A stretch of DNA of 64,000 nt from Heptranchias perlo (lineage: Eukaryota). Below are positions 11,121 to 61,285 of this stretch, one piece after another. Each line of letters starts with the position of its first letter. Positions within the stretch are counted from its first letter, which is position 1. The position numbers were made by a program, and so were the translations under genes. The notes under the pieces are model-generated. The model had not been told where the DNA came from and did not search any database. It worked only from the letters and a program-made list of their open reading frames with translations. Where the stretch lies: assembly GCF_035084215.1 (NCBI RefSeq), contig NC_090338.1, forward strand, positions 15,438,001 through 15,502,000. The letters are read 5' to 3'.

Positions 11121-11192
11121 TCATTTATATTTTGCTTGTGCTATTTGTGCATAGATAACAAATGAATCATCTTCCTTTGAAGGAGTCAGGTT
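11121..11192 (-). CDS. Terminal coding exon (NLTPSKEDDSFVIYAQIAQAKYK*; ITIM VIYAQI)
   Basis: TTTCTCTCTTGCAG acceptor, phase 0, TGA at 11121-11123. Confidence 0.8.
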   Translation of the reverse strand, partial: NLTPSKEDDSFVIYAQIAQAKYK

Positions 11193-11332
11193 CTGCAAGA
11201 GAGAAATTAACCATTTATAATAATGTGAACTATTACTGCATCTCTTTACATCAGATAACAACTTTACAGATTTGTTGCGGATATTAATATTGTAGGACGT
11301 GTGATTGCACCAATATGAGTCCATATACTTAC

Positions 11333-11376
11333 AGTATCTGAAGATTGTTGATTGCCTTGTGTACCATGTCTGGACC
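11333..11376 (-). CDS. Cytoplasmic exon 4 (GSRHGTQGNQQSSDT)
   Basis: 44 nt, phase 1 to phase 0, AACAG acceptor, GTAAGT donor. It supplies exactly the phase change the last exon needs. Confidence 0.7.
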
Positions 11377-11668
11377 CTGTTATAATTGCAAACACCACAA
11401 TTAAATGATAACATTGACAGATCAGACTGACAAAAAAACTGACAAATAGCATATAAATATCCTTATCTTACTGCATTTCACTCGTACAGCCAATGGATCA
11501 GCAAGATATTGATTGACAGTGAACCCAGTTTTCATCTGTATAACCCAGGTCCACACTAAGCACTGCATTTACACAGGGAGCCATTGGAACGGTCATAAAT
11601 GAACTAAGCTCCAGAAATGACTGTGCAGAGTTTGAGAGTTTCCTTGCTTTTGCAGCTTCAGATACATG

Positions 11669-14600
11669 GGCCCCGATAATAGAGTGGAGGTGGGATGGCA
11701 GCAGCGGGGGGAGTGAATGGGCAAGTGGGTAACCCGACTGATAAAATAACATCCATTTCCCAAGTGATTGCAATTTAATGGTACCACTTAACGTGGCTTC
11801 TGGGTTTGCCATCCGAAAGCTGCGCAGCGGGCAGATTGTGCATCCGCATCACAGGCTGTCAGCTGGAGGAGCTCTATTTAACCAGCCATTGCTCCAATGG
11901 CTTTTCCTGGAGCAAACACCTACACACCACAATGGAGCAGCACAGAGGCAAGGCTGCTCCAAGGTTCAATGATGCCTCACTCGATGGGATGAGGAGGAGG
12001 AGGGATCTATTTTACAGGGCTGACGGGAGGAAGTGGCCTGCCTCTGCCACCAAGAAGGCTTGGCTTGAGGTGGCAGAGGAGGTCACCAGCAGTAGTAACA
12101 TCTCGTGCTTCGTTGCAGGAAGCGCTTCAATGATCTAACGAGATCAGCCAAAGTGAGTACACTTATTGATTCTCCTACACTCCGTCTTCCACATCACCGC
12201 CCCCACTCTCCAACTCATTCTGCACTGCCAACACTACTCTATCACATCACTCCTCACACCCACTTAAGGCTCATCCTCAACTTACCTGCACTTCCTCACC
12301 TCCCCATTACTCACCCCACTACTACCACTCAACCCAATCCTCTGTCTTATACTCACCCTCTGATGCATTGCTTTCACGGTCAGCCTCACCCAAACCAATG
12401 CATTCATCGGTTGGCCACTTCACCATCACTCACTCACACGTCTGCTCTTTGTCCCCTTCTAGGAGAAGAGAGCGCAAAATGCACGGAAGAGGGCGAGGAC
12501 CAGAAGAGGGCTGCAACAAATCGTCATCCTCACAGACGCAGAGCAGGAGACACTGGAGCTCAGCCGAACCCTCGAGTGCCTGTCCGTCGGAGACACCGAG
12601 ACTGGCACCCCACAAACATCTGGTGACACAACTTTAACATTCATCACACACAATATGAATTGATGTTAACATGCCATGCCATCTTCAGCACCTCATCGCA
12701 ACATGACACATCCGTGATGATGCTTGATATTGCCTTCTGTTCTCTTCCAGGGCCTTCAGCTACCGCTGTGACGGCAGAGGGCGATTCCTCAGAGGACCTG
12801 CCGGCCTCTGAGGATGCACCGTCACATCTTAGAGAGCCATCCACCAGAGCAGCTACTCACACCTCGGTGGATCCTAGTAATCAGTTAGTTGGCTTAGCAC
12901 CTGTTGAGTTACCATACACATGTGAGCACGAGCAGACACTGGTGGCAGGGGCAGCATCGTGACGGTGGAAGCACTCCTCTCCAGGCTCTGCTCAGCTGGA
13001 CGCAGATGCGGAACCCTGGGGGCCATCCTTTAAAATGAGAATGATGGAGACACAGCAGCACATTTGCGAGGTGCTGGAACAGGTGCCATGTGCACTCTCC
13101 ACAATAGCGCAGAGAATGGAAGAGTCCAACGCCTGCACGAGTGGAATGGTGGCACAGGTATGGGATGGATTCTCTGAGATACTGTCGCAGGGACGTGAGC
13201 AACTGTCTGAGATAGTGTCTCAGGTAAGTGCAGGAAAGTCTGCAATGGAGAAAAGGCTAGCGTCCATTGAGCTTCAAGCACGGCTCACAAATGAGTCCAT
13301 TCAGGCCCTGACAACAGCCATTCGGACTCAGGGTGAACAATTTTCTGCCGCCTTAAACAGGCAGACAGATAAACTAGCACTGGCCTTAAAATACATCACA
13401 CATGTCCTCCAAACTGTTGTCCAGCAGAGTGGTAGGCGTGATGTGGCCCTGGCCCACGGGAGGGATGATGATAAAGGGGACATGGAAGTGGGGATGCCAC
13501 TCAAAGCGCCCCCAGGTCTCACCCGTTGCCCCCCTCTCAACCAGTATCCGCAATGCTGCCCCTCCTCCAGGTGGCCGAGTCTGCCCCTGCACAGGTGCGG
13601 GTGGAGCAGTCTTTGGAGGGGCCCTCACAAGCTCCAAAACCCAGAGGGTATAGGCCAGAAGCATCTAAGCAGTCAGGGCATGAACATGAGCAACCTGCCA
13701 CTACCTCTGCTGCGGCCACAGGGGATGCACCACGTAGAAGTAGCCACCAGAGAAAGGCGAAGGTTTTGTAAGCACAAAGGGTATGCGCAAGGGTGTTTGA
13801 CAGATGCTCATGTTTTTCATTTATATTTGCTTTTTGTTAAACTCACATTAAATATTATTATTGTCACCACTACTGCCATATCTTGGCCATTCTTGACTGG
13901 CATTTGTGATAGGGCCCTTTCATGAGGTTCACCATGAAAGACGACACTTGATGCCACCCATTGGGTCACTTTTCAGTGGTTGTATGTGTAGTTGCAGGAC
14001 TGTTTTGTGCAGGGAGAGGTGAGCGGCCTAGTGTGGGCGCTCCTCTTTCCAGGTGGTCTGAGGACTGGACTCTTCAAACTTTCTGATGTTAGGAGAACCG
14101 TTCACATATCAGTGACTCCCTGTCCTGATGAGTTGCCAAGTGAGCCGCTGCTCTGCCCATGGGTTCCTCCTCCTCCTCCTCCGCCTCCTCCTCTGCCGCC
14201 TCCTCCTCAATGTGGATGGCAGATGTGGATGCGGCCTCCTCAAGCGGCACCTCTCTCTGTTGTGCCATGTTATGCAGGGCACAACACATGACCATAATGC
14301 GTCCCACTCTGTATGGTGCGTATTGGAGATCTCCCCCAGAACAATCAAGGCACCTAAATCGCATCTTGAGCAGCTCTACAGCATGGTCAATTGTAGACCT
14401 GGTGGCGAGGTGTCTGCTGTTATATCGACGCTGTTGCTCGGTGATAGGGTTCCTTAGAGGTGTCATGAGCCACATGTGCAGGGGTATCCCTTGCCCCGAG
14501 GAGCCAGCTCTTAAGGGTGTTCAGTGCGTGGAAGAGGGGCGGGAAGTTGGATTCCATCAGGATGCAGGAATCGTGGCCAGGGAATCTGGTGCACACGTGA

Positions 14601-15766
14601 AGGAATCTTTTGCGGTGGTCACAAACGAGCTGAGCATTGATGGAGTGATACCCCTTCCTGTTGATGAACAGTCTTGGCTCGTGAGGAGGTGCTCAGATTG
14701 CTACATGGGTGCAATCAATTGCACCCTGCACCTGTGGGAAGCCAGCCACAGCGTCCTCTCCGTCTGGCTGAGGTGGTCCATGGGGAAGTTGACGTACTGT
14801 GAGGCCCTGCGGAACAAGCCATCGGTGACCTGCCTTATGCACTCGTGTGCAGATGACTGAGAAACCCCGACAATGTCCCCAGTGGCACCCTGTAATGATT
14901 CGGAGGCGAAGAAATTGAGGGCAGTGGTGACTTTGACAGCAATAGGTAAGGAGATGCTGCTTGGCCCAGCCGGGAACAGCTTGGCATGAAGGAGGCTGCA
15001 GATGTCTGTGACTACCTGGCGATGGACTCTAAGCCTCCGTATGCACTGCTCCTCAGAGAGGTCCAGGAAGCTGAGCCTTGGTCTGTAGACCCTGTGGCGA
15101 GGGTAGTGCCTCCTGCGACATCGCTCTCTCTGTTGTTGCCCTCTATGCTCTTGTGCAGGTGCCTATGGCGCAGCACTGTGGTGTGGAGCTCCAAGTGGCG
15201 GAGGTGGACGGCGTGCCTGGCGATGTTGCTCGTCCTTGGATATAGTGGTGAATGCAGCCATCCTGATGGTGTGAGTTTGAGGGGGTCCGAAAAGTAGTTA
15301 AATATGTGTGAATAGAAGAATTGTGAGTGGAAATTAAGAATTTTTAACTAAAAACACAAAGATATTGAAGCCAGAAGTTTGTGTGAAAGAACTGATTGCC
15401 CACCTTTTCTCCCCTTCTGTCAAACAAGCATTTGAATGTGCAACTGGCTGCTGGTTGAAACACATCTGTTAGAACATGGAGTGTTTCCCACAGCACGGGA
15501 AACACGCTGAGGATGCTTCAAAATTGGACCCCTGCCTCAATGTGAAGAAAATTAAATACTTCAATAAGTTAAACTATCTGAACAACTGTGTAAAGTATCA
15601 TCCCGCTGGCTTTAATTGCCGGTGGGACCTACGCACTCAGACGCATCCGTGGGGAACCCGGAAATCTGCGGGTTGGAGCTGGGTTCTGAACCTGATCGGG
15701 GTTTCCCCGATTTTCGGAGTCCCCCTGCCCCCAATGCACCCGCTACTTCCCTGCAAAATTGAGTCC
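11669..15766. mobile_element. PIF/Harbinger DNA transposon, decayed two-gene element
   Basis: Myb/SANT-like gene on + from 11932 (MEQHRGKAAPRF...KKAWLEVAEEV...CRKRFNDL). HARBI1-like transposase on - at about 14089-15270 (LLKMRFRCL...CCALHN). GGGCYCGATTTT-like ends. Confidence 0.85.
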
Positions 15767-15964
15767 ATGCTTTTATATAGAAAGCATAGAAATTATAGCA
15801 CAGCAAGAGGCCATTTGGCCCATTGTACCTAGACTGGTGCTAGCTGTTCAACGGCAGCTATCCTTTTAATCCCATTTCCCTGTTTCTTCTGATGAAAATT
15901 TTAAATGTCCTGTTTATTTTTACATGATTTTAGTTTACAATTTATGCTATTTTAGATGTATTCG

Positions 15965-16380
15965 AGAGAAAGCGCGGCAGTCGCCCCCAGTGGCCCGGCA
16001 TAAAGGAGCAGCGGAGAGAGAGAGAGAGAGAGCTCAGAGAAAGCACGGGAATCCCCCCCCCCCCCCCCCCAGTGACCCAGTATAAAGGAGCAGCGAGAGA
16101 GAGAGAGAGAGAGCCCAAAGAAAGTGCGGGAATCCCCCCCGCAGTGACCCGGTATAAAGGAGCAGCGAGAGAGAGAGAGCCCAGAGAAAGTGCGGGAATT
16201 CCCCCCGTAGTGACCCGGTAGAAAGGAGCAGCGAGAGAGAGAGAGAGAGAGAGAGAGCCAAGAGAAAGTGCGGGAATCCCCCCCGTAGTGACCCGGTATA
16301 AAGGAGCAGCGAGAGAGAGAGAGAGAGAGCCCAGAGAAAGTGTGGGAATCCCTCCCAGGAGGGGCAGGATAAAGGAGCAT
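15965..16380. repeat. Minisatellite, about 7 copies of a 55-65 bp unit with C-run, TATAAA and (GA)n
   Basis: Unit approximately CCAGAGAAAGTGCGGGAATCCCCCCCGTAGTGACCCGGTATAAAGGAGCAGC(GA)n. Confidence 0.9.
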
Positions 16381-16563
16381 CAGTGGGTGAGAAGCTTTAT
16401 TCTGTGTTTGGCTGCGCTGTACCTGCCCGAGGAGTGCATGATGCTGAGATTAGGTGCCTAAAGATAATGAGTTTTATTACCCAGCACTAACATTCCTCGC
16501 CTTGATGAACATAAAAATAAAAAAAAGGACAAAGAAAAAAATTTCAACACGAAGTTTCACTAC

Positions 16564-16620
16564 CTTGTGCTTTTTTTTGAAAAATGACAGATGCGTAATG
16601 AATATCTTCTCTTTCTGTGT
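16564..16620 (-). CDS. Cytoplasmic exon 3 (DTEREDIHYASVIFQKKAQ; ITIM IHYASV)
   Basis: 57 nt, TTCTCTGCAG acceptor, weak donor G|GTAGTG. Confidence 0.75.
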
Positions 16621-17727: not shown

Positions 17728-17805
17728 CTTCTTTTTTTGCCTTTATATTGACAGTTGCATATTCAGAAAAATGACTTGTCTCAGGCACTGATGTCTCGTT
17801 ATCTC
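17728..17805 (-). CDS. Cytoplasmic exon 2 (GDNETSVPETSHFSEYATVNIKAKKE; SxYxxV motif)
   Basis: 78 nt, TTTTTTCCAG acceptor, G|GTAAGT donor. Confidence 0.8.
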
Positions 17806-20226: not shown

Positions 20227-20325
20227 CTTGCATTTGCTGTATTTCATTAGCATTTGAATAAAGCTGAGATGCATCTTCTATATTTTCCCTTGGCTGCAGA
20301 GGTTTCTGTCTTTGATTTTCCAAAC
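20227..20325 (-). CDS. Cytoplasmic exon 1 (GLENQRQKPLQPRENIEDASQLYSNANEIQQMQ; YxN motif)
   Basis: 99 nt open, phase 1-1, AACAG acceptor, G|GTAACA donor. Confidence 0.7.
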
Positions 20326-20945: not shown

Positions 20946-20954
20946 ACATCAACC

Positions 20955-22130: not shown

Positions 22131-22458
22131 CTGCTGCCTTGAACTTTCTTAGACACAGCACCACTGCCAGGATAATGATGAGGAGAAGAGCCAGACTCCC
22201 AAAAATAACTGTAAACAATTTTACAACACCAAGTTATAGTCCAGCAATTTTATTTTAAATTCACAAGCTTTCGGAGATTTTCTCCTTCCTCATTTACCTG
22301 AGGAAGGAGAAAATCTCCGAAAGCTTGTGAATTTAAAATAAAATTGCTGGACTATAACTTGGTGTTGTAAAATTGTTTACAATTGTCAACCCCAGTCCAT
22401 CACCGGCATCTCCACATCCCAAAAATAACAACATTGGTATGTTTAAAAGTGTAATCAT
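22131..22458 (-). pseudogene. Transmembrane exon (NDYTFKHTNVVIFGSLALLLIIILAVVLCLRKFKAA once the insertion is removed), interrupted by a Penelope-derived insertion
   Basis: Removing 22210-22429 (insert plus one TSD copy) restores a 108-nt phase 1-1 exon. Acceptor CTTCTGACAG, donor G|GTAAGA. Confidence 0.85.
22210..22416 (+). mobile_element. Penelope 3'-end insertion forming a perfect 83-bp inverted repeat, 13-bp TSD
   Basis: Arms at 22210-22292 and 22299-22381, loop TTTACC. TSD TCCCAAAAATAAC at 22197-22209 and 22417-22429. 22291-22416 matches 62389-62514 with one mismatch. Confidence 0.9.
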
Positions 22459-30502: not shown

Positions 30503-30772
30503 TGTTAACCTTCAGATAATATGGAATTGAAACCTTGGGCGAGTTTTGATGAAACAAAACACATGTCCAGTTCCTTCTGTCTCGATGGGCTTTCTGAATA
30601 ATCAGCTGTAAACATTTCTGTTCCTGCTTCTGTTCCTTAAAAGTTTTCTCTTCAACAGTTTTGCCATCATTATTGATCCAAACAAGCCTAATTGATTCAG
30701 TGACATCCGAGACAGAACAGGTCAGGGTAACGGTGTCTCCCTCAGTCACTGTATCAGATGGTTCAGCTCTGA
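30503..30772 (-). CDS. Ig domain 8 exon (C2-like, W-x-C; paralog of D4)
   Basis: VTLTC..RLVW..RNWTC, 270 nt, acceptor TTACACAG, donor A|GTAAGT. Confidence 0.9.
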
Positions 30773-30850: not shown

Positions 30851-31189
30851 CTTTAACTGTGATTAGTTTAATGGTCACATATGGATATGGCCCCAGAGAA
30901 CATGTGTAAACCCCGGCATCTTCGAACAGTACAGGGACAATCCTCACAATGAAGTACTTGCGATTAAAATTTGCCATTGTGGGTTCCAGTCGAGTCCCAA
31001 AGTAGGTCCTGTTTAGTTTGATAGGCTTAGAGCTGAAAGTAGAAGCTATTTCTTCCTCTTGATTCTGAAAATGATGTGACCTCCAGGTCCATTTAGTTTT
31101 AGTGTACTCAGATTGAGCTTCACAAATCAGGTAGAGTTCACTGTGATCTGTGCCTGACCGATAAAGTGTGTAACTCTTATTATTTAAAT
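30851..31189 (-). CDS. Ig domain 7 exon (V-set; paralog of D3)
   Basis: Open 339 nt, absent from the ORF track: DLNNKSYTLYRSGTDHSELYLICEAQSEYTKTKWTW...FEDAGVYTCSLGPYPYVTIKLITVK. Acceptor CTATTGCAG, donor G|GTAGGA. Confidence 0.9.
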
Positions 31190-38423: not shown

Positions 38424-38687
38424 CCTGATTCACATCAACATTTGTGTTTCCAGTGAGAACAATGGAGTCATTTTCCTGCACTTCCCACGTATACAAATTC
38501 TGATTTTTTGTACTGACTGTCAGATAGACTGTGTTATTCAGATGGATCTCATCAGTGTTGTTCCTCCTGTTCTGCTGAGATGAGTCTCTTTGTTTCCAGT
38601 GAAGACTGACTGTATCTGAGAGTCTGGAGATGGTACATCTGAGGGTGATGTCGCTGCCCATTACAGGCCTCTGTGAATCCGTCTCAA
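38424..38687 (-). CDS. Ig domain 6 exon (C2-like; paralog of D2; second Cys replaced by Trp)
   Basis: ITLRC..SLHW..LYTW, 264 nt, acceptor TTTTTTTACAG, donor G|GTAAGT. Confidence 0.9.
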
Positions 38688-38713
38688 CTGTAAAAAAAAT
38701 GACGTGAGATTTA

Positions 38714-41437: not shown

Positions 41438-41782
41438 CTTTGATCCCAAATATTTCGTACTGTTTCAGGGTTTTGTTACTGGGCTGTGTCTGAGTCCAGG
41501 TGAACAATCCCGCAAGTTCAAAGGTGGGGTTTCTGATTCTCAGATTAAGGGTACCCCAGTCCTCACGTATCCTCTGAGAAATGCCTGGTATCTTATTGTA
41601 ATCATCACTCCATTGTACGGCCCACCGCTGACCTTCTCTGTGAAAAGTGCCCAATTGCTTTGTAGTTTGTTGTCCTGAGTGTGGTCTCCATTCCCAGACA
41701 ATGGGGCCATTTCCAGGAAAATCTGGCCCTTTAATTACAAAGTTGCCTTCCTGATGGAAAAAATAAATATAATTGGGGCTTC
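41438..41782 (-). CDS. Ig domain 5 exon (V-like, no cysteines; paralog of D1)
   Basis: Open 345 nt, GSPNYIYFF...VIKGPDFPGNGPIVWEW...LNLRIRNPTFELAGLFTW...EIFGIK. Acceptor TTTCTTGCAG, donor G|GTAAGT. Confidence 0.9.
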
Positions 41783-43838: not shown

Positions 43839-44108
43839 CACTGGGCTCCAGATAGTACGGGACTAAAACCAAAGGCCTGTTTTGATAAAACAAAGCACAT
43901 ATCCAGTTCCCTCTGCCTCTGTCAACTTTCTGAATATTCAGTCTCAATGATTTCTCTTCCCCATTCCATCCATTCAATGTTTTATTTCCTACAGTTTTGC
44001 CATCACTATTGATCCAAACAAGTCGGATTGACTCAATGACATCAGAGACAGAACAGGTCAGGGTAACGGTGTCTCCCTCAGTCACTGCATCAGATGGTTC
44101 AGCTATGA
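43839..44108 (-). CDS. Ig domain 4 exon (C2-like, W-x-C)
   Basis: VTLTC..RLVW..GNWIC, 270 nt, acceptor TTACTCAG, donor G|GTAAGT. Confidence 0.9.
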
Positions 44109-44186
44109 CTGAGTAAACAAGAAAATCATTTAGATTTTACACAATGAATTTATCACTGAAAACAACAGCAACATTCAGTCTCGTAC

Positions 44187-44540
44187 CTTTAACTATGATT
44201 AGTTTAACGGTCACCAATTTATGTCGTCCCAGAGAACATGTGTAAACTCCGGCATCTTCAAACAGTACAGGGACAATCCTCACACTGAAGTTCTTGCCAT
44301 TAAAATTTGCCATTGTGGGAACCAGTCGATTCCCAAAGTAGCTCCTGTTTACATTGATGAGCTCAGATTTCGAAGCAGATGCTATTTTTTTCTCCTGACT
44401 CTGAAGATGATGTGACTTCCAGGCCCATGCAGCAGTATCGTAAGAATAAACATAATTATTATAATAATCATAGCAAATCAGGTAGAAGTCACTGTGATCT
44501 GTGCCTGACCGATAAAGTGTGTAACTTTTAGAATATAAAC
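44187..44540 (-). CDS. Ig domain 3 exon (V-set)
   Basis: Open 354 nt, absent from the ORF track: GLYSKSYTLYRSGTDHSDFYLICYDYYNNYVYSYDTAAWAW...FGNRL...FSVRIVPVLFEDAGVYTCSLG...VKLIIVK. Acceptor TTCTATTGCAG, donor G|GTACGA. Confidence 0.9.
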
Positions 44541-47800: not shown

Positions 47801-48505
47801 TCTCACAAGGGTAGTGCCCCCTGCGACATCGAGCCCCCTGTTCCCCTTTCTGCAGGTCCCTGTGGCGTACCTCTGTCTTGTGGAGCTAAGTGGTGGAACT
47901 ACACGCCATGCCTGCCATGGATGGTGATTTGCCTCCTCCTCGGGTGTACTGGTGAATGCAGCCATTGCGCCCCCCCATCCTGATTTTGTCAGTTTGAGGG
48001 GGTCCAAAAAGTAGATAAATATGTGTAAACAGAAGAATTCTGAGTATGAACCAAGAATTCTCAGTCTAAACGCAAAGAACTCCCAGCCAAAAGTTTGTCT
48101 GAGAGAACTGAGTGCCCTACTGCAATAACTCACCTTTTATCCCCATCTGTCAAACAGAGATTTAAATGACCAAATGGCTGCCGGCTGCAACCCGCCTAAT
48201 TGCCATGGCGTGTTTCACACAGCACGGGAAACACGTTGAGGCCGAGTTAAAATCCTTTCCCTGCATCAATAAATATGAAATTAATCATTTCAACAATATT
48301 AAATACCTTAATTCCTGCTTTAAATATCGTCCCGCCGGCTTTAATTGCCGGTGGAACTTCCGGCTTCCTGAAGCACACCCGATGCATCTGGGTCGCACAC
48401 GTTTTCGGCGGGTTGGAGCCAGGATTCCTTCCCGCTCCAGAAATCCGCGATTTGATTGCTCCCCAGCCCCCAATGCACCCGGACTTCGGGGCTAAAATCG
48501 TGCCT
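44856..48505. mobile_element. PIF/Harbinger element of the 11669-15766 lineage, transposase internally deleted
   Basis: Myb/SANT gene on + at about 45120-46954, transposase remnant on - at about 47240-47970, CAT flanking both ends. Confidence 0.8.
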
Positions 48506-49690: not shown

Positions 49691-52075
49691 CAAAAGCAAA
49701 ATACTGTGGATGCTGGAATCTGAAATAAAAACAGAGAATGCTGGAAAAGCTCAGCAAGTGAGGCAGCATCTGTGGAGACAGAAACAGAGTTAACAGTTCA
49801 GGTTGAAGACCTTTTGTCAGAACTGGAAGATGTTAAAGAGTTAAAGTTTTTAAGCAAGTACAGAGCCAGGGAAAGGGGGGAGGGAGGGGATGGAGGGAAA
49901 GAACAAAAGGGAAGGTCTGTGATAGGGTAGATGACAGGAGTGATTAAATGACAGAAGGGATATGGTGCAAGGCAAGGAGGGTGGGAATGCGACAAGTTAA
50001 GAAACAAAAGATCAGTCTAGAGTAGCTGTAAATGGCAACAGCAGAACCATAACCAGCAGCCTACAGTCCAATAAATTTTAAAAAAAATTAAAAATGGGGG
50101 CAGTGGTTATGGTCTGAAGTTATTGAAATCAATGTTGAGTCTGGAAGGTTGTAAAGTGCCTAAACGAAAGAAGAGAAGCTGTTCCTCGAGCTTACATTGA
50201 GCTTCATTGGAACAGTGTAAGAGGCCGAGGACAGAGAGGTCAGAGTGGGACTGGGATGGTGCATTAAAATGACAAGCGAACAGCAGGTCAGGGTCATGCT
50301 TGCGGACAGAGTGGAGGTGTTCAGCAAAGCGATCACCCAATCTGCGTTTGGTCTCCCCAATGTAGAGGAGACCGCATTGTCTGCAGCGAATACAGTATAT
50401 GAAATTGAAAGAAGTACAAGTAAATCGCTGTTTCACCTGGAAGGAGTGTTTGTGGCCCTGGACAGTGGGAAGGGAGGAGGTGAAAGGGCAGGTGTTGCAT
50501 CTCCTGTGCTCGCACGGGAAGGTGCTGTGGGGAGGAGAGCAGGTCTTGGGGGTGATGGAAGAGTGGACCAGAATGCTGCAGAGGGAGCGGTCCCTTTGGA
50601 GTGCTGAAAGGGGAGGGGAGGGGAGGATGTGTTTGGTGGTGGGTTTGCGCTGGTGGTGGCGGATATGGCGGAGGATGATACGTTGAATGTGGAGGCCGGT
50701 GGGGTAGAAAGGGAGGCAAGGGAAGGGGTGAGGGCACAAGTGCGGGAAATAGGACGGACACGGTCGAGGGCCATGTCGACTACAGTGGAGGGGAATCCTT
50801 GGTTGAGCAAAAAGGAAGACATATCGGAAGCACTGGTGTGGAAGGTGGCATCATCAGAACAGATGCGATGGAGGCGGAGAAACTGGGAGAAGGGAATTGA
50901 GTCCTTACAGGAAGTGGGGCGGGAGGAAGTGTAATCAAGGTAGCTGTGGGAGTTGGTGGGCTTATAATAGATATTGGTTGACAGCCTATCCCCAGAAATG
51001 GAGATAGAGAAGTCAAGGAAGGGAAGGGAAGAGTTGGAGATGGACCATGTGAAGGCGAGGGAAGGATGGAGATTTTCCAGTTCGGGGCGAGAGCAGGAAG
51101 CGGCACCGATACAGTCATCAACATACCGGAAAAAGAGGTGAGGGAGGGGACCTCAGTGGGACTGGAACAGGGAATGTTCCACGTAGCCCACAAAAAGGCA
51201 GGCATAGCTGGGACCCATACGGGTTCCCATAGCGACACCTTTTATTTGGAGGAAGTGAGTGGAGTCAAAGGAGAAGTTGTTCATTGTAAGAACAAGTTCA
51301 GACAGGTGGAGGAGGGTGGTGGTGGATGGGGACTGGTTGAGCCTCCGTTCAAGGAAGAAGCGGAGGGCCCGCAGGCCATCCTGGTGGGGAATGGAGGTAT
51401 AGAGGGACTGGACGTCCATGGTGAAAAGGAGACGGTTAGGGCCGGGGAACTGGAAGCTGTTAAAGTGGCGGAGGGTGTCAGAAGAGTCGCGGATGTAGGT
51501 TGGAAGAGAATGGACAAAGGGAGAAAAAGAGTCGAGATAGTGAAATCCCTTCTGTCATTTAATCACTCTTGCCTTCTACCCTATCACAGACCTTCCCTTT
51601 TGTTCTTTCCTTGGAACATAAGAACATAAGAGATAGGAGCAGGAGTAGGCCATACAGCCCCTCAAGCCTGCTCCGCCATTCAATCAGATCATGGTTGATG
51701 TTCGACCTCAACTCCACGTTCCCGCCCAATCCCCATAACCCTTGATTCCCCAAGATTCCAAAAATCTATCTATCTTAGCCTTGAATATATTCAATGTCTC
51801 AGCATCCACAGCCCTCCGGGGTAGAGAATTCTAAAAATTCACAAACCTCTGCATGAAGAAATTCCTCCTCATCTCAGTCTTGAATGGCCGACCCCTTATC
51901 CTGAGACTATGCCTTCCCTTCCCCTTTCCCTGGCTCTGTACAAGCTTAAAAACTTTAACTCTTTCACATCTTCCAGTTCTGATGAAGGGTCATCGACCTG
52001 AAACATTAACTCTGTTTCTTTCTCCACAGATGCTGCCTCACTTGCTGACCTTTTCCAGCATTTTCTGTTTTTATT
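49691..52075 (-). mobile_element. Penelope-like element with an inverted copy of its 3' end at the 5' side, inserted in an older CR1 and itself interrupted by a CR1 tail (about 51614-51912)
   Basis: MDVQSLYTSIPH, GVAMGTRMGPSYA, CRQCGLLYIGETKRRL. About 49730-49950 (-) is repeated in + orientation at about 51553-52070. Confidence 0.85.
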
Positions 52076-52941: not shown

Positions 52942-53211
52942 CCTGGCTCACAGGAAAATTTGCTTTTCCTGTGAGAATAATGGATCCATTTTCCTGCACT
53001 TCACACACATACAACTCCTTATCCTCTACTTTGACATGTTTGATTATCAGATAGACTGTGTTCTTTATTCGGATATGATCAGTGTTCCTCCTGTTCTGTT
53101 GACATGAGTCCCTTTGTTTCCATTGAAGACTGACTGTATCTGAGAGTTTGGAGATGGTACAGCTGAGTGTAACGTCACTGCCCACCACAGCACTCTGTGG
53201 ACTTGACACAA
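52942..53211 (-). CDS. Ig domain 2 exon (C2-like)
   Basis: VTLSC..SLQW..LYVC, 270 nt, acceptor TTTTCACAG, donor G|GTAGGT. Confidence 0.9.
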
Positions 53212-54789: not shown

Positions 54790-55102
54790 CTTTGATTCCA
54801 AATATTTCGTACTGTTTCAGGATTTTATTACTCGGCTGTGTCTCAGTCAAGATGAACAATCCCGCAAGTTCAAATGTGGGTTTTCTAATTCTCAGATTAA
54901 GGGTACCAGGGTCCCGCTGCACCTCCGGATACAATTTCCTAAAGTGATCGTTCCATTCTACGCTCCCCCAGCCCCAATTATATTTCTGAATAACCTGAGT
55001 GTGGTTTCCATTTCCAGACAACACGACCATTTCCAGGATTGTCTGGTCCTTTTAATGAAACTTTATCTCCCTTATCCAAAAAATAAATAAGATTTGGGTT
55101 TC
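54790..55102 (-). pseudogene. Ig domain 1 exon (V-like, no cysteines), frameshifted
   Basis: GNPNLIYFLDKGDKVSLKGPDNPGNGRVVWKWKPHSG, then a frame change to ...GTLNLRIRKPTFELAGLFILTETQPSNKILKQYEIFGIK. Length is 313 nt (316 with the alternative NAG acceptor), not a multiple of 3. Paralog of 41438-41782. Donor G|GTGAGT. Confidence 0.85.
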
Positions 55103-55554
55103 CTGCTAGAGAGAGGAACAAAGTAAACATTTTAATATTTAAATCGCAACTCCTTAATTCCATGTTTGTATTAATTGATATTGGACTTCATATATTTACA
55201 GTCATATTTTTATATTCAATAGTTTCAGCAATGACACAGACACAGCCCTGTGAAGAGCTGTCTGTCTGGAATAATCAGGCCTCATCCAATGATAGGACAT
55301 TAGAGGGTAAATTTCTGTCACTGCACTCTGACATCGTGGGCTGGTGGTGTCTAATTTCACAATATGTATTTCCAGCATTTAACAGGAGTGCGGAAGGGTA
55401 ATCGTTGCTCCCATATTGTTAAGAAATTTGGAATAACATCACAATAATCGGTATTCTCCTAAAATTGAATATGGTACTGGTGCGATCATACCACTTCAGG
55501 ATCAAAAATCAAGTCAGTGATCTCCAAAAGTGGTCTCCTCTCCTCTTGTGCAAT

Positions 55555-58500
55555 GCACAGTAAGTTGTTGCTTCTCCTGGACCACCGGTGACCAGGCTAC
55601 CCACAGGAGTAGAAGGCGAGAGAGAGGCAGAGGAAAATGTCCCGACTCCAGAAAAGCATGCAGAATCTGCTCCTGCTGCAGTCGATGGGGATCGATGTCA
55701 GGGAGGAACTCAGAGAGGTAAAGGACCAGCAAGCTTCGCTCTTTGCCTCCGAGGCCTCCAAGATCATCTTCCGGTCCAGAGTCCGCTCTGTGGATCAGGA
55801 CGAGACTTGCTCGCGTTTCTTCTTCCAAAAAGTGCACAGAGCTCTGTAATCAGCAGCCTGAAGGAAGTCGACGGCTCGGTCACGTCCTCGCAGCCCGACA
55901 TACTGAGGATCTGCAAATCCTTTTATGCTGGACTGTACTACGGAAAGCCCACAGACAGCGCGGCCTCCCAGTCCTTCTTGTCGTCTATCACGGAGGTTCT
56001 AGACGACAGCAAGCGGGAGGATCTGGATCACCCGCTAACTCTGGACGAACTGACAAAGGCCATCCGTTCCTTTGAGAAGAGTAAGACACCCGGAAGCGAC
56101 GGCTTACCAGTGGAGTTTTACTCGGCTCTGTGGGACTGGTTAGGCCCAGACCTGCTGGAAGTGTACGGGAGTATGCTTCGGGCAGGCAGCATGTCAGACT
56201 CCATGAGGAAAGGCATCAACACCCTCATCTACAAGCAGAAGGGGGAGGGGGAAGAAATCAAAAATTGTCGACCCATCTCACTACTTAACGTGGACTACAA
56301 AATTCTGTCCAAGGTCATCGCCAATCGGGTCAAGTCAGCCCTGGAGGTGGTGATCCACCCCGATCAGACCTGCGCTGTACCCGGCAGGAAGATCTCTGAT
56401 AGCCTGGCGCTACTCAGGGATACGATCGCCTACGTATAGGACAGGGGGGGTGAACACCTGCCTCATCAGCCTGGACCAGGAGAAGGCCTTTGACAGAATA
56501 TCCCACGCGTACATGATGGACGTGCTCTCTAAAATGAGGTTTGGGGAGGGAATCCGCAATTGGATCCAACTGCTCAACACAGACATCAGTAGCGCAGTTT
56601 CAATCAACGGGTGGGAATCAGAAAGCTTTCTGATCAAATCTGGAGTCAGGCAGGGTTGTCTTCTCTCCTCCGTCTTGTTCATGTGTTGCATCGAACCCTT
56701 TGCTGAGTCCATCAGGACGGTTGCGGACATAAGAGGGGTGATGATCCCAGGCAGCGGAGTCACTCAGGTCAAGGCCTCCCTGTACATGGACGACATCGCC
56801 GTCTTTTGCTCAATTCAGCTGTCGATCCGCAGATTGGTGAGCATCTGCGACCAGTTCGAACTGGCCTCGGGGGCCAGGGTAAATCGTGGCAAGAGTGAGG
56901 CCATGTTCTTTGGGAACTGGACCGACCGATCCTTTGTCCCCTTCACCGTCAGGCCAGATTACCTGAAGGTGCTGGGGATCTACTTTGGGGGGGCCGGGGC
57001 GTGCACCAAAAACTGGGAGGAGCGGATTGCCAAGGTGAAGCAGAAACTGGGACTGTGGGATTGACGATCCCTCTCGATTGTGGGCAAGAACCTGGTCATC
57101 AGGTGCGAGGTACTTTCCGTGTTGCTGTACGTGGCGCAGGTCTGGCCCATACCGTGCTCCTGCGCCGCGACAGTCACCCAAGCCATCTTCCACTTTATCT
57201 GGAGATCAAAAATGGACCATGTCCGCAGGGACACGATGTACAAATCTCCAGAGAAAGGAGGGAAATACGTGCCCAACGTGGCTCTCATCCTGATGGCCAC
57301 CTTTGCGTGCGGCTGCATCAAGCTGTGCGTAGACCCTCAGTATGCAAACACAAAGTGCCACTATGTGCTAAGGTTCTACCTGTCCCCGGTGTTGAGAAGG
57401 ATGGGCCTGGCCACGTGTCACGGAATGTTCCATCCAGTTGGACCGTTCCGCCCCACCTGTCCTTCATGGAAACGTTTGTGCAGAAAAACACCTTTGATCA
57501 CAAGGCGATCAGCGTCACCCATCTCCTTCTGGAATGTGCCTTTGCAAAGAAGGTCTGGAGAGAGATGCAGTGGTATCTGTCCAGGTTTGTCCCGAGCAGT
57601 TCCATAACACAGGATTCTGTGCTCTATGGGCTGTTCCCAGGGACGCACTGTAGGGGGTAGTGGTGTGTGTCAGCTTCACCTCTGAATTCTGAGCGGTTCA
57701 AATCGGTCCCACTCCCTTGGTTCTAGACCTTGGACTTATTTGGGGGTTGTGACAAAAATGCAGCAGACAACTGGGTTTGGTGCAAGAAAACTGGGTTTAT
57801 TGAAGTCACAAATGAACTTATAACATTAGGATTACACTGAGATTATACAGACATACAAAAGTACACTTAGTTAAGAATGGGGAATACACGGCACAACGAG
57901 GGAAAATCACCCTACTAATCCCCTTACCCTTGTCCCACCCCCAAAACCTAACTAAATTGAACTAGGAGAGGTCAGGAATCATGATCACCAACAAGGGTTC
58001 CTTGACACTTCGAAATCCAGCTAGGTAAGCCGGTTGCAGTTTTGGGGTACGCTCTTTGTGTCCTTTGGGGCCTGCCGTCCCCACGTGGTCCTGGTCTGTG
58101 GAATCTGCGAAGGTTCTTCAGTTGGGTGGAGTTCGCTGATGCGGTAAGGCGCGGTTGTGGGTGGTCGATCTTCATGGAGAGCTGCGGTTGCGGCCTTGTT
58201 GTCTTCGGTTGAGTCAGCCATGCCATGCCCCTCGCCGTGATGTTGCCTGCGGGCCTGTGAACCTCCGGATCTCCTTCCTCCGCTTAGCTCAGCTATCTCT
58301 CCCTGCTTAAACTCTGCTTAAAACTGCTTAAAACCTGCCCCCTTCGTAACTGGTGGCCCAGTTATACTGTTTTTTGAATTTCTTATCGGAGCGCCAAATC
58401 AAGGTTAGTTCTTTGTCTGATTTAGGTGGGCTTCTTCAGGTGATTATAGTTTTTCGCCTTAACTGGTTTTGGGGTGGTTGTCTCGTTGTTTTTAATGGGC

Positions 58501-59437: not shown

Positions 59438-59442
59438 AACAA

Positions 59443-60080
59443 AGGGAGGCAGGATTTTCCACTTTGCCATAATCTGGCTGTAGGTCAGTGTGACAGACTC
59501 TGTCTTCTCCCACCGTGAATCTCAGGGAATTTCCTGAGGCCAGGCTAATTTCCATAATTATGGTGCTCCCAGCAGGATTCTATCTTTGATCCGAGGAAGC
59601 CACCTGGGAGAGGGAGGAAGATGGTCGCTGCAGGTCTCGAATGCATGCAGCAGCAGATCAGGACTGGCTAGATGCGAGGCAGCTGATGAGGAGTGACAAC
59701 TTTTGAAAAATTACAAACTTGGCCGTGTGATTGATCAACTCATGATCAATTGACTTGCTTCAGAAAGATCTTTGAAACTTAAATCCCCTCCCACACACCA
59801 TTGCAACGCTGGATGCCGGGAACATGCTGCTGTTCTTTGTGATCCAGCATTGCTATGGGAGTAATGACGGAGAATATAACATCTGATAACACTTGGTCAT
59901 TTGATATCACTTGGCCGTTCAGGCAATGTGAATAAACCTCTTCATATTTGGGTCCGTATATTTAGTGAAGTGACGACAATCTGCAGGGAGCAGGTCGCCG
60001 GATCCCCACCCCTACTTTCTGATCCCGCCGAGCACAATCTGTCCAAAATTGGGCAAGACGGCAGAGCAAAATCCTCTCCC
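59443..60080. mobile_element. MITE-like element
   Basis: Imperfect TIRs GGGAGGCAGGATTTT ... AAAATCCTCTCCC. Confidence 0.45.
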
Positions 60081-61146
60081 ATTATGATTCCAAGAACTTG
60101 GCAAGGCTCCTTCATTGAGGAGTTCCATGCGGAGAAGGTTATAATAACACACAAATACATGAGGAGAAAGCACTGTATCATGTTGCCTTCACTGCAGGCA
60201 GTGTTACAGAGAAAAACAGAACAATTCCATTATACATTCAGTGTATCTATTACTAGAGTTATCAGAACATACATCATTACTACAAAAAGTAACCAAAATA
60301 AAAAGAGAGGACATGGCTAAATTCCCTGTTACAGAAAATAAAGGTCCACATATCCTTGTGACTACTGGTCTACAGTGTGCGGTATCAGGGTGGACAGGAG
60401 CGAGCGGGAGAGAAATTGGGGCAGGACGCAACCCAACCGTTCTTGGAGGTTAAAACTCCCCCCTCATGTGTCTGTAAGTCTAGATTAAATAGCAACTCAC
60501 ATCACAGTTACCAAAAATAAAATGGCTCCGTGCACATTGTATTCACTGTGAAGTTTAAAGACAAAGTTTGGACACTAAACTACGAAATAACCCAAAGTGA
60601 GCATCAGTGACAAAACATCAAACCTTTTCAAATTATGTTTTATCAAGCTGTAATTTTTGTAATTTACACAGGCTCAAATAACAAACAATTCTCAATTATT
60701 CCTAATGTGATAAATATTCATTAACATTTAAAAATAGTTATTACTTTTGAAACCATTCTATACCACATCCAATCTGTTAGGCTGTTGAATTATCAAATAA
60801 AGAAAGTGCTCCACAGAGCGAGTGTGATACTTTGAAATGTGACAGCTTGCTGTGTGATGAAGTTTGCTAAATATAAGGACAGATGGATAGAAGGATGTTT
60901 GGAGAGATTAATAGATAGATCAGGAAAAGGAGTTGAAGAGCAATGAGAAGTATGCCAAAAATTTTCATTTTATTAAGTTGTTCCATTGCTTAAATCTGAA
61001 AAGCAAACTTACTCATCCTGTTTAAAGGAGCAGGGACATGAAAATAAAGACCTTACTTACTTTCTAAATAGTAGGTGCGTGATTTTATTAAACACGATGA
61101 TAAAGTCAAACAATATGAATGTGATTGGTGGAAAAAAGGCACTTAC

Positions 61147-61234
61147 TCTGAGTGAAAACAGACCGAAGTAGAAACACAAAGAAACTTAACATCAAACCAG
61201 CTGGTATTTTGCTGCAGAAAAATCGGAGACACAT
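61147..61234 (-). CDS. Signal-peptide exon, MCLRFFCSKIPAGLMLSFFVFLLRSVFTQ (exon starts at 61256 with 5'UTR)
   Basis: Acceptor TTTCTTACAG ends at 61257, ATG at 61234, hydrophobic core, phase-1 donor A|GTAAGT at 61146. Confidence 0.75.
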
Positions 61235-61285
61235 TTTGCAGATTCAGTCTCTTCGCCTGTAAGAAATATACATGTCAATATATAT

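What the first reader, a model, noticed from the sequence alone, without database searches (positions are those of the whole stretch)
11121..61256. Eight-Ig-domain inhibitory receptor with a doubled CD4/LAG-3-type ectodomain
Seen: 15 phase-compatible exons give signal peptide, (V-C2-V-C2)x2, an uncharged TM helix and a tail of about 120 aa with SEYATV, IHYASV, VIYAQI and YSN. The repaired protein is roughly 1000 aa. Established: V-C2-V-C2 with W-x-C replacing Y-x-C in C2 F-strands is the hallmark of CD4 and LAG-3, which have at most four domains; CD4 tails carry an Lck-binding CxC/CxH and LAG-3 tails lack classical multi-ITIM arrays. Inference: this is neither CD4 nor LAG-3 but a member of a CD4/LAG-3-like ITIM receptor family of cartilaginous fish that I cannot match to a named gene. 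The relationship to CD4/LAG-3 rests only on layout and the WxC motif.
Basis: partly seen in the sequence, partly recalled or inferred. Interest (0 to 1): 0.88.

Follow-up and report, generated by a model that had tools for sequence, protein, structure and literature searches.

The report
Shark CD4-like eight-Ig inhibitory receptor gene
A sevengill-shark gene for a long immune-cell surface receptor, built from two copies of a CD4/LAG-3-like four-domain module plus an inhibitory tail, belongs to a large unnamed receptor family, but this copy carries two damaging lesions.

Summary
The 15 exons are real. They lie on the minus strand (61234 to 11121) with canonical splice sites, and 13 of them match one public model exactly: "uncharacterized protein [Heptranchias perlo]", 849 aa. 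Spliced RNA contigs join D3-D4-D5-D6(-D7-D8), so the doubled ectodomain sits in one mRNA.

The eight-Ig membrane protein is not encoded intact here. The D1 exon is 316 nt, frameshifted with a stop. The TM exon is split by a 208-nt hairpin element, which leaves an in-frame acceptor. The public model skips both exons.

The gene belongs to an unnamed multigene family with a strict d1-d2-d3-d4 unit repeated one to four times. The family occurs in sharks, rays and chimaera, and also in sturgeon, paddlefish, bichir and eel. It has ITIM forms and forms with a lysine in the TM. The doubling predates the shark-ray split.

The CD4/LAG-3 likeness is supported by predicted structure. Continuous V-to-C2 strands are present, and the best PDB matches are LAG-3 and CD4, with TM-score 0.61-0.72 for the two-domain rod. 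It is not robust at sequence level. WxC occurs only in D4 and D8, and no CD4 or LAG-3 tail motif is present.

Verdict: a new variant of a known kind; interest is moderate to high.

The parts
61147..61234 (-). Exon 1: start codon and signal peptide (29 codons + 1 base, phase 1 out)
   Evidence: Exact match to P0041 residues 1-29.
54790..55105 (-). Exon 2: D1, a cysteine-less V-type domain. It is broken: 316 nt (mod 3 = 1) with an in-frame TAA near 54981, and about 23 nt are missing relative to paralogues.
   Evidence: In one search, tblastn with P0075 covers residues 22-57 and 68-136, with 7 nt standing in for 10 residues. The exon is absent from the public model P0041.
52942..53211 (-). Exon 3: D2, a C2-type Ig domain with a canonical YVC F-strand
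   Evidence: Pfam Ig_3 1.5e-08. Exact in P0041.
44187..44540 (-). Exon 4: D3, V-type domain (C...W...YTC)
   Evidence: Pfam V-set 2.2e-05, at 25.0 bits just under the cut-off of 26. Junction 44187|44108 seen in RNA contigs.
43839..44108 (-). Exon 5: D4, C2-type domain with WIC in the F strand
   Evidence: RNA junctions to D3 and to D5.
41438..41782 (-). Exon 6: D5, an intact cysteine-less V-type domain (paralogue of D1)
   Evidence: No Pfam hit. 35 family hits in the HMMER search of 1.84 billion proteins. RNA junctions 43839|41782 and 41438|38687.
38424..38687 (-). Exon 7: D6, a C2-type domain whose F-strand cysteine is replaced (LYTWEV). The replacement is conserved in rays and other sharks.
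   Evidence: The same motif is in P0004, P0001, P0049, P0079 and P0086.
30851..31189 (-). Exon 8: D7, V-type domain (paralogue of D3, 66% aa identity)
   Evidence: It is contained in the 1065-nt RNA contig of run X3.
30503..30772 (-). Exon 9: D8, C2-type domain with WTC (paralogue of D4, 66% aa identity)
   Evidence: Pfam ig 8.9e-10.
22131..22458 (-). Exon 10: transmembrane exon. The ancestral 108 nt are split by an insertion. The new in-frame acceptor at 22208 would leave a 78-nt exon encoding IFGSLALLLIIILAVVLCLRKFKAA.
   Evidence: An intact version is present in paralogues P0082 and P0075. Absent from the public model P0041.
22209..22416 (-). A 208-nt hairpin element inserted in the TM exon, flanked by a 12-nt target-site duplication (22417-22428 and 22197-22208)
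   Evidence: inverted repeat of 172 nt at 97.7%; a second copy at 62389-62514 at 99%.
20227..20325 (-). Exon 11: tail exon with QLYSNA (a YxN motif), phase 1-1
17728..17805 (-). Exon 12: tail exon with the ITIM SEYATV, phase 1-1
16564..16620 (-). Exon 13: tail exon with the ITIM IHYASV, 57 nt, phase 1-1
   Evidence: One search printed the 3' end one base off; I corrected it from the sequence shown.
11333..11376 (-). Exon 14: tail exon GSRHGTQGNQQSSDT, 44 nt, phase 1 in and phase 0 out
11121..11192 (-). Exon 15: last coding exon with the ITIM VIYAQI and the stop codon

Best explanation
The locus is the sevengill-shark (Heptranchias perlo) member of an unnamed, ancient multigene family of type I immunoglobulin-superfamily receptors. 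Each family member is built from a fixed four-domain unit: d1, a cysteine-less V domain; d2, a C2 domain; d3, a V domain; d4, a C2 domain with WxC. The unit folds as two CD4/LAG-3-like rigid V-C2 rods.

This gene carries two such units in series. That distal-plus-proximal arrangement already existed before sharks and rays split. The units are followed by an uncharged TM helix and a tail, spread over five exons, with one YxN motif and three canonical ITIMs.

Inferred mechanism:
- The ectodomain binds an unknown cell-surface ligand.
- Src-family kinases phosphorylate the ITIM tyrosines.
- SHP-1/SHP-2-type phosphatases dock there and damp activating signals.
- Sister genes have near-identical ectodomains but a lysine in the TM and a short tail. 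These would pair with an ITAM adaptor and signal the opposite way.

In the assembled haplotype the gene is damaged. D1 has a frameshifting deletion, and a young hairpin element sits in the TM exon. mRNA is still made. A membrane-anchored product is possible only if D1 is skipped and the new acceptor at 22208 is used, which would give seven Ig domains.

Shown: exons, splice junctions, family membership, lesions, motifs. Supported only by predicted structure: the CD4/LAG-3-like rods. Inferred: ligand binding, phosphatase recruitment, adaptor pairing and the splicing rescue.
For: Gene structure:
- All Ig exons are phase 1-1 with AG/GT boundaries.
- 10 of the 13 exon pieces tested are found exactly in the public protein P0041. 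Three further tail exons match at 97-100%.

Transcription (contigs of runs X1-X3, one sample):
- D5|D6 (41438|38687) in 3 of the 4 runs laid.
- D4|D5 in X1 and X3 (sides of 31 and 32 letters). The same junction also appears with a variant sequence in X2 and X3.
- D3|D4 in X1 and X3.
- One 1065-nt contig reads D5-D6-D7-D8.

Family:
- The HMMER search with D5 gave 35 hits at E <= 1e-3, 24 of them at E <= 1e-10.
- The search with P0008 gave 78 relatives.
- The d1-d2-d3-d4 order is strict in the stored proteins examined.
- Eight-Ig forms occur in Mobula, Pristis, Cetorhinus, Leucoraja, Carcharodon and Callorhinchus.
- The membrane-proximal units form one clade of 17 rows from sharks and rays, SH-aLRT 98.

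CD4/LAG-3-like rods:
- AlphaFold models have pLDDT 80.0 and 80.9, with unbroken strands 132-147, 336-350 and 133-148 across the V-C2 junctions.
- Foldseek ranks 1-3 for the four-domain model are LAG-3, LAG-3 and CD4.
- Ranks 1-10 for the two-domain model are LAG-3 D3-4 and CD4 D1-2, with target TM-score 0.61-0.72 and rmsd 4.2-7.3 A. Fab and TCR chains score about 0.4 with rmsd about 13 A.
- The 33-sequence family profile has LAG-3 as joint top PDB hit (5.3e-10), with WxC aligned.
- hhalign of d1d2 against d3d4 gives 95.5% probability, E 1.4e-8.

Signalling and paired forms:
- The tail has three ITIMs and one YxN.
- Of 102 members, 24 have an uncharged TM with ITIMs and 26 have a charged TM without ITIM.
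Against: - The D1 frameshift and the TM insertion mean the intact receptor cannot be made from this haplotype. The only public model (P0041) has no TM segment at all.
- The RNA contigs differ from the window by 0-4% in the exons. They may come from another allele or an unannotated near-identical paralogue.
- The runs are only guessed to be RNA. A processed DNA copy is not excluded.
- At sequence level the LAG-3 link is fragile. It ties with CEA. A profile of five d3-d4-only proteins ranks CD276 first (2.5e-8) and LAG-3 at 2.5e-4.
- The d1-d2 profile finds nothing specific.
- Single exons find no CD4 or LAG-3 domain match.
- No CD4-specific Pfam family is hit.
- WxC is missing from d2.
- The structural evidence rests on predicted models, not solved structures.
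- No ligand, no expression pattern and no phosphatase binding is known.
Confidence: 0.62

Rival explanations
1. The locus is a recently inactivated pseudogene. Family identity is as above, but the D1 frameshift and the TM-exon insertion have killed it. What is transcribed is decaying or aberrant RNA, or comes from another allele or paralogue.
For: - D1 is 316 nt with an in-frame stop.
- A 208-nt element sits in the TM exon.
- The public model must skip both exons and ends up without a TM.
- The exonic RNA contigs differ by up to 4% from the window.
- D6 lacks its F-strand cysteine. That feature is conserved elsewhere, so it weighs little.
Against: - All other 13 exons are open, with intact splice sites.
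- The insert is very young: its copies are 99-100% alike. It also supplies an in-frame AG acceptor that keeps the whole hydrophobic helix.
- Skipping of phase-1 Ig exons is annotated for the neighbouring paralogue. P0082 lacks d1 and P0075 lacks d4.
- Contigs identical to the window over 128 nt of D5, and at the D4|D5 junction, exist.
Confidence: 0.35
2. The likeness to CD4/LAG-3 is generic or convergent. On this reading the family is an independent IgSF lineage, possibly nearer the B7/CD276 or CTX-type V-C pairs, and 'CD4/LAG-3-like' describes shape only.
For: - The profile of five d3-d4-only members ranks CD276 first (2.5e-8), then MXRA8 and PD-1, with LAG-3 at 2.5e-4.
- PD-L1 aligns over a long V+C stretch with the 33-sequence profile.
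- NCBI's pipeline names two members 'CD276 antigen homolog' and one member 'vascular cell adhesion protein 1-like'.
- d2 has YxC, not WxC.
- The tails and TM types are unlike CD4 and LAG-3.
- In the four-domain Foldseek search, E-values for unrelated four-domain chains are only 1-2 orders weaker.
Against: - No B7-family chain is among the 50 best listed Foldseek matches of the two-domain model. LAG-3 D3-4 and CD4 D1-2 fill ranks 1-10, and they superpose as whole rods.
- The continuous G-A strand is described as rare and typical of CD4/LAG-3 (PMC10768021, section 3.6, read).
- WxC in d4 aligns with WxC of LAG-3 D2.
Confidence: 0.3
3. It is a SLAM/CD2-family receptor. This was my own early idea, prompted by a V domain without a disulfide and by tail tyrosine motifs that recalled ITSMs (recalled from memory).
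For: - D1 and D5 lack the canonical cysteines.
- There is a weak Pfam Receptor_2B4 hit on D2: E 0.02, 15.6 bits, below the cut-off of 21.
Against: - No TxYxx[VI] motif in the tail.
- No SLAM or CD2 chain among the 60 best PDB sequence hits, nor among the listed Foldseek hits.
- The unit has four domain types, not V-C2.
Confidence: 0.03
4. Two adjacent four-Ig genes (D1-D4 and D5-D8) were wrongly read as one gene.
For: - Single-unit members of both unit types exist as separate genes in other species, for example P0008 and P0049.
Against: - RNA contigs join D4 to D5 at the exact splice sites in X1, X2 and X3.
- There is no signal-peptide or TM exon between D4 and D5.
- Eight-Ig proteins with the same order are annotated in at least six other genera.
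Confidence: 0.03

Closest known systems
LAG-3 (CD223)
   Same: - V-C2-V-C2 layout.
- WxC in a C2 F strand, aligned with LAG-3 D2.
- Rigid V-C2 rod with a continuous strand. LAG-3 is the top Foldseek match for both models and the joint top sequence-profile match.
- Inhibitory function is expected.
   Different: - WxC is in d4 only, not d2.
- The tail has three canonical ITIMs on several exons, whereas LAG-3 has one (F/Y)xxL(D/E) motif on a single exon (PMC10768021, section 3.1).
- It is a multigene family with activating twins.
- The unit is repeated one to four times.
- d1 has no cysteines.
- The sequence link is not robust.
CD4 (including fish CD4-1 and CD4-2)
   Same: - Four-domain V-C2-V-C2 unit with one exon per domain, as in shark CD4 (PMC10768021, section 3.2).
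- CD4 D1-D2 superposes on the d3-d4 model with TM-score 0.65-0.72 and rmsd 4.2-5.8 A.
- Module duplication has a precedent in zebrafish CD4-2.2, described in that paper's section 3.4 (passage seen).
   Different: - No Cx(C/H) Lck-binding motif and no cysteine in the tail at all.
- No CD4-specific Pfam families are hit.
- None of the 78 relatives carries a CD4 name.
- It has eight domains, ITIMs and paired activating forms.
Paired activating/inhibitory Ig-like receptor families (KIR, LILR, SIRP in mammals; NITR, LITR, DICP in bony fish). These names are recalled, not tested here.
   Same: - Clustered multigene family.
- Near-identical ectodomains are joined either to an uncharged TM with ITIMs or to a TM with a basic residue and a short tail.
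- The number of Ig domains varies.
   Different: - The domains are of other types and the unit is a fixed four-domain block with CD4-like rods.
- None of these families appeared among the best sequence or fold matches. LILRB1 and LILRB2 appear only as weak single-domain hits.
B7 family (CD276/B7-H3, PD-L1)
   Same: - V-C pair. CD276 is the top PDB sequence hit of the small d3-d4 profile.
- CD276 also repeats its V-C pair (recalled).
- NCBI names two members 'CD276 antigen homolog'.
   Different: - No B7 chain is among the 50 best listed fold matches of the two-domain model.
- B7 proteins are ligands without ITIM tails (recalled).

Membership tests
CD4/LAG-3 family (features as listed in PMC10768021, sections 3.1, 3.2 and 3.6) | Ectodomain unit of four Ig-like domains in the order V-C2-V-C2 | tested here: met
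   Pfam and secondary structure of the AlphaFold model. The d1-d2-d3-d4 order is strict in the stored family proteins. Here the unit occurs twice.
CD4/LAG-3 family | [quoted passage not shown] | tested here: not met
   D4 has WIC and D8 has WTC, but D2 has YVC and D6 has YTW. The family consensus for d2 is LYxCEV. The feature is therefore met in only half of the C2 domains.
CD4/LAG-3 family | Continuous beta-strand running from V-domain strand G into C2-domain strand A (rod-like V-C2 pair) | tested here: met
   This was tested on predicted models only. The strands are 132-147 and 336-350 in the P0008 model and 133-148 in the P0104 model. The two-domain model superposes on CD4 D1-D2 and LAG-3 D3-D4 as a whole rod.
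CD4/LAG-3 family | Overall sequence similarity: the top database matches are CD4 or LAG-3 | tested here: inconclusive
   The 33-sequence profile has LAG-3 as joint first hit with CEA, at 5.3e-10. The 5-sequence d3-d4 profile has CD276 first and LAG-3 at 2.5e-4. The d1-d2 profile finds nothing specific. None of the 78 relatives is named CD4 or LAG-3.
CD4/LAG-3 family | Gene lies in the conserved CD4/LAG-3 genomic region | not testable with these tools
The paper's text gives no chromosome positions.
CD4 proper | Cx(C/H) motif in a multi-exon cytoplasmic tail | tested here: not met
   There is no C.[CH] match and no cysteine in the 115 residues after D8. The tail is multi-exon.
LAG-3 proper | (F/Y)xxL(D/E) motif in a tail encoded by a single exon after the TM exon | tested here: not met
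   There is no [FY]..L[DE] match, and five tail exons follow the TM exon.
ITIM-bearing inhibitory IgSF receptors (functional class) | Type I receptor with an uncharged TM and at least one (S/I/V/L)xYxx(I/V/L) motif in the tail | tested here: met
   SEYATV, IHYASV and VIYAQI are present. The TM remnant IFGSLALLLIIILAVVLCL is uncharged. However, the TM exon is interrupted.
ITIM-bearing inhibitory IgSF receptors (functional class) | Phosphotyrosine-dependent recruitment of SHP-1, SHP-2 or SHIP | not testable with these tools
   This needs biochemistry.
Unnamed d1-d2-d3-d4 receptor family of cartilaginous and basal ray-finned fishes (defined here) | Cysteine-less V (d1), C2 (d2), V (d3) and WxC C2 (d4), in that order, each matched by the family HMMs | tested here: met
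   P0041, this gene's public model, reads d2-d3-d4-d1-d2-d3-d4. The window also holds the broken d1. The D5 exon finds 35 family proteins.
SLAM/CD2 family | ITSM TxYxx(V/I) in the tail; V-C2 ectodomain related to CD2/SLAM | tested here: not met
   There is no ITSM. No SLAM or CD2 chain is among the best listed sequence or fold matches.

The most novel reading that the evidence does not exclude
The family is the closest surviving sister lineage of CD4 and LAG-3. It would be a paired activating/inhibitory, modular receptor system (4, 8 and up to about 16 Ig domains) built from the same V-C2 rods. It has been kept from chimaeras to sturgeons and eels and was not detected in tetrapods or most teleosts by my searches. 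On this reading it preserves the state from which the MHC class II co-receptors arose, and its members bind MHC class II or MHC-like ligands on myeloid or NK-like cells.
Probability: 0.15. Interest if true: 0.85.

Novelty: new variant of a known kind. Interest (0 to 1): 0.6.

Why it matters
As far as I recall, no germline-encoded paired NK- or myeloid-type receptor system has been characterised functionally in sharks. The origin of the CD4/LAG-3 V-C2-V-C2 ectodomain is still argued from motifs alone (PMC10768021, sections 3.1 and 3.6).

A large, conserved and so far unnamed family is now identified, present from chimaera to sturgeon and eel. It uses CD4/LAG-3-like rods, comes in ITIM and charged-TM versions, and multiplies its four-domain block. 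This gives three things:
- an outgroup with which the V-C2 duplication model can be tested;
- candidate inhibitory and activating receptors for shark innate or regulatory cells;
- a natural series of 4-, 8- and about 16-Ig receptors for asking how ectodomain length tunes signalling.

The locus itself also shows a very young hairpin element disrupting a coding exon while supplying a new in-frame splice acceptor.

Tried and rejected
SLAM/CD2 idea. It was raised after because of the cysteine-less V domain and the tail tyrosines. I dropped it.

Two-genes idea. Dropped.

Single-exon searches against PDB sequences (D5, D7, D8) gave only generic Ig hits. The CD4 rows cover just 26 residues around the B-strand cysteine. 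I do not count them as evidence.

ESM Atlas gave generic V-set and Ig clusters. A 'LAG3 protein (Fragment)' cluster stood at rank 4 with score 0.92. I treat this as a lead only.

Run X5, a fish metagenome, covered only the intronic repeats between 38.6 and 41.2 kb and none of the exons. It gives no support.

The first regex classification of tails (last line) was too crude: 17 proteins scored as 'both'. I replaced it with the TM-aware count.

One search printed the 3' end of the IHYASV exon one base off. I corrected it by eye.

Literature. Five searches and reading of PMC10768021 found no description of this family. For that paper I saw the outline, sections 10, 11 and 15, and passages by term search. 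This covers only the held library. Subscription journals and the paper's supplementary files 3-6 (sequence lists, BLAST top matches, trees) were not seen, and they could mention these proteins.

Not done:
- Synteny.
- A phylogeny with real CD4 and LAG-3 sequences.
- A test of D1 inclusion or of TM-exon splicing in reads.
- The joined step. The spliced model of the window was searched exon by exon only. I left the joined step out and assembled no joined product.

Full report
**What is in the window.** The window has no N. A motif scan and a reading of all minus-strand open frames found Ig-like exons only on the minus strand. A local tblastn showed that the V exon at 44.5 kb and the C2 exon at 44.0 kb have copies at 31.1 and 30.7 kb.

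Reading the boundaries gave 15 exons with canonical AG/GT sites:
- signal peptide, 61234-61147, phase 1 out;
- eight Ig exons, D1 to D8, each entered and left in phase 1;
- a TM exon, 22458-22131;
- five tail exons: 20325-20227, 17805-17728, 16620-16564, 11376-11333 (phase 1 in, phase 0 out) and 11192-11121.

Exon lengths are multiples of three, with three exceptions. The leader (88 nt) and the penultimate exon (44 nt) are as the phases require. D1 is the real exception. In Pfam, D2, D4, D6 and D8 score as Ig domains. D3 and D7 score as weak V-set domains (25.0 and 22.4 bits against a cut-off of 26). D1 and D5 hit no family. The language-model search puts D5 among V-set clusters.

**Two lesions.** D1 is 316 nt (mod 3 = 1) and runs into TAA after ...KPHSGYSEI. 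The rest of the domain continues in another frame. Against the paralogue P0075, residues 22-57 and 68-136 align, and 7 nt stand where 10 residues are expected. That is a deletion of about 23 nt.

The TM exon would be 108 nt but is split by a 208-nt element. The element is flanked by a 12-nt duplication and folds as a 172-nt inverted repeat (97.7%). A 99% identical copy lies at 62389-62514. The element ends in ...TTTACAG. This creates an in-frame acceptor at 22208 that would keep IFGSLALLLIIILAVVLCLRKFKAA. I found no evidence that the element is a retroelement.

**The gene is already in the public record.** tblastn of family proteins against the window and exact string matching show that P0041 is a model of this gene. 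P0041 is 'uncharacterized protein [Heptranchias perlo]', 849 aa. SP, D2-D8 and two tail exons are found letter for letter, which is 10 of the 13 pieces tested. The misses are the two D1 pieces and the TM piece. The other three tail exons match at 97-100%. The model therefore skips D1 and the TM exon. It describes a seven-Ig protein without a membrane anchor (one search lists it under 'no TM'). The window therefore comes from this shark or from a very close relative.

**Transcription.** One search found five runs. I laid X1, X2, X3 (one sample) and X5 on 38390-44380. All are contigs, so neither strand nor expression level can be read.

- X5 covers only intronic repeats.
- X1-X3 cover the exons and skip the introns at exactly the predicted sites.
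- D5|D6 (41438|38687, GT..AG on the minus strand) is seen in 3 of the 4 runs.
- D4|D5 (43839|41782) is seen in X1 and X3, with sides of 31 and 32 letters.
- The D4|D5 junction is also seen in X2 and X3 with seven other letters. On reading these, they are the same junction in a variant sequence.
- D3|D4 (44187|44108) is seen in X1 (side 28, below the tool's bar of 31) and in X3 (side 118).
- One 1065-nt contig of X3 reads D5, D6, then 174 letters, then pieces that the tool laid on D3 and D4. The lengths fit D7 (174 + 165 = 339) followed by D8.

So the doubled ectodomain is one mRNA.

Caveats on the RNA evidence:
- The exonic contigs differ from the window by 0 to about 4%.
- Two variants occur in one sample. 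An allele or an unannotated paralogue may be the source.
- D1, the TM exon and the tail lie outside the stretch I could lay.

**The family.** The D5 exon, searched alone against 1.84 billion proteins, found 35 proteins at E <= 1e-3 (24 at <= 1e-10, 7 at <= 1e-30). One of these is a bacterial autotransporter that I regard as spurious.

A full-length member (P0008) found 78 relatives. All those whose names I saw are 'uncharacterized', 'hypothetical' or 'Ig-like domain-containing', apart from two 'CD276 antigen homolog' and one 'vascular cell adhesion protein 1-like'.

The species include:
- many sharks and rays;
- the chimaera Callorhinchus;
- among bony fishes, sturgeons, paddlefish, bichir and eel, with a weak hit in a gadiform.

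HMMs of the four domain types show a strict d1-d2-d3-d4 order. The block occurs once, twice, or more: about 15 domains in a catshark model and 20 in an eel model, though long models may fuse neighbouring genes.

The C-terminal ends fall into two main types. Of 102 proteins examined:
- 24 have an uncharged TM with 1-3 ITIMs;
- 26 have a charged TM without ITIM, 24 of them with the motif YL.VKL;
- 12 have an uncharged TM without ITIM;
- 3 have an arginine in the TM plus ITIMs;
- 37 have no TM (partial or secreted models).

**Age of the doubling.** Within the window, the two units are 51-66% identical in protein, and short intron remnants next to the exons still align. A quick maximum-likelihood tree was built from 55 d3-d4 segments. 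These came from 39 proteins that I chose out of the 118 stored proteins read by the script, and support is SH-aLRT only. The tree puts the membrane-proximal units of sharks and rays, including this gene's D7-D8, in one clade of 17 rows (support 98). This gene's D3-D4 groups with the H. perlo paralogues (support 98). The Cys-to-Trp change in D6 is shared with Mobula, catshark, sawshark and skates. The two units of the chimaera protein pair with each other (support 100), which points to a separate duplication or to homogenisation. The root of the tree is not known.

**Is it CD4/LAG-3-like?** The criteria come from PMC10768021. I read sections 3.1, 3.2 and 3.6 and saw passages elsewhere.

For:
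- The V-C2-V-C2 order.
- WxC in d4.
- One exon per domain, as in shark CD4 and LAG-3.
- AlphaFold models made with family alignments (P0008, pLDDT 80.0; P0104, a natural d3-d4-only member, pLDDT 80.9) show unbroken strands across both V-C2 junctions.
- Foldseek against the PDB ranks LAG-3, LAG-3 and CD4 first for the four-domain model, with E from 1.9e-17 to 5.8e-17.
- For the two-domain model, LAG-3 D3-4 and CD4 D1-2 fill ranks 1-10. Target-normalised TM-scores are 0.61-0.72 and rmsd is 4.2-7.3 A over about 195 columns. Fab and TCR chains reach about 0.4 with rmsd about 13 A.
- The 33-sequence profile has LAG-3 as joint top PDB hit. It aligns the d3 E-G strands plus d4 to LAG-3 D1-D2 with WxC in register, and a second stretch aligns to LAG-3 D3-D4.
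- hhalign finds d1d2 collinear with d3d4 (95.5% probability, E 1.4e-8). Crosswise controls score 0.2-7.5%.

Against:
- d2 has YxC.
- CEA ties with LAG-3.
- A 5-sequence d3-d4 profile ranks CD276 first and LAG-3 at 2.5e-4.
- The d1-d2 profile finds nothing specific.
- No CD4-specific Pfam family is hit.
- The tail has neither Cx(C/H) nor (F/Y)xxL(D/E).
- Synteny could not be tested.
- The two VIA-align libraries were not available.

My reading is that the ectodomain works like CD4/LAG-3 rods. Common descent is plausible but unproven.

**How it most likely works.** The tail holds QLYSNA (YxN) and the canonical ITIMs SEYATV, IHYASV and VIYAQI. It has no ITSM and no ITAM. From general knowledge of ITIM receptors, which I did not test, I infer that phosphorylated ITIMs recruit SHP-1 or SHP-2. 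I also infer that the lysine-TM twins pair with an ITAM adaptor. The ligand is unknown.

**Literature.** Five full-text searches found no paper on this family.

**Earlier notes of this scan.** s1-882991 led me to the TM insertion. The ITIM notes listed concern other receptor types on other pieces of the genome and did not change my reading.

**Verdict.** It is a new variant of a known kind. Interest is 0.6.

Noticed in passing
window 22209-22416 and 62389-62514: A young hairpin-forming repeat: 208 nt, a 172-nt inverted repeat, and a 12-nt target-site duplication at the TM-exon copy. It occurs twice in the window at 99-100% identity. There is no poly-A tail and no ORF, so it looks more like a foldback or MITE-type element than a retroelement.
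   Followed up: partly
window about 38800-40800; also about 14100-15200, 29100-29900 and 47200-47900, minus strand: Several copies of a PIF/Harbinger-like transposon lie in the introns. One copy was scanned: the ORF at 14092-14520 hits DDE_Tnp_4 at 5.9e-12. The other copies were recognised by eye from similar ORF translations. Contigs of runs X1-X3 and X5 pile up on 38.8-40.8 kb at summed depths up to about 290,000, so the repeat family is abundant in those libraries.
   Followed up: partly
window 50110-51560, minus strand: A degraded retroelement in the D2-D3 intron. It has a reverse-transcriptase-like motif (seen by eye) followed by a GIY-YIG nuclease domain (Pfam 1.2e-4). That combination is recalled as typical of Penelope-like elements.
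   Followed up: partly
window 1056-1967 (-) and 55588-56439 (+): ORFs with reverse-transcriptase domains (RVT_1 at 6.9e-19 and 3.7e-07). These are LINE-type fragments, one in the flank and one just upstream of D1.
   Followed up: no
window 43611-43761, and the joint 43761|43839 in run X2: RNA contigs with 11 mismatches cover part of the intron just after D4. One contig joins it to the end of D4 by skipping 77 nt without GT..AG ends. The first 68 nt after D4 and after D8 are 75% alike. Public models of other species end by reading through this donor, for example P0043. This hints at a soluble read-through isoform, or at a paralogue with a deletion. It is unexplained.
   Followed up: partly
window about 15950-16450, minus strand: A low-complexity tandem array that translates to repeated SLSLSL... 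motifs in all three frames. It lies in the intron upstream of the penultimate tail exon.
   Followed up: no
stored proteins P0004, P0036, P0050 (Mobula birostris): The eight-Ig ITIM form of the manta ray has an arginine inside the TM helix (VVITWVVALRLIIILVMVL) together with ITIMs. Its HLYSN exon is duplicated. This suggests a possible dual-signalling variant.
   Followed up: no
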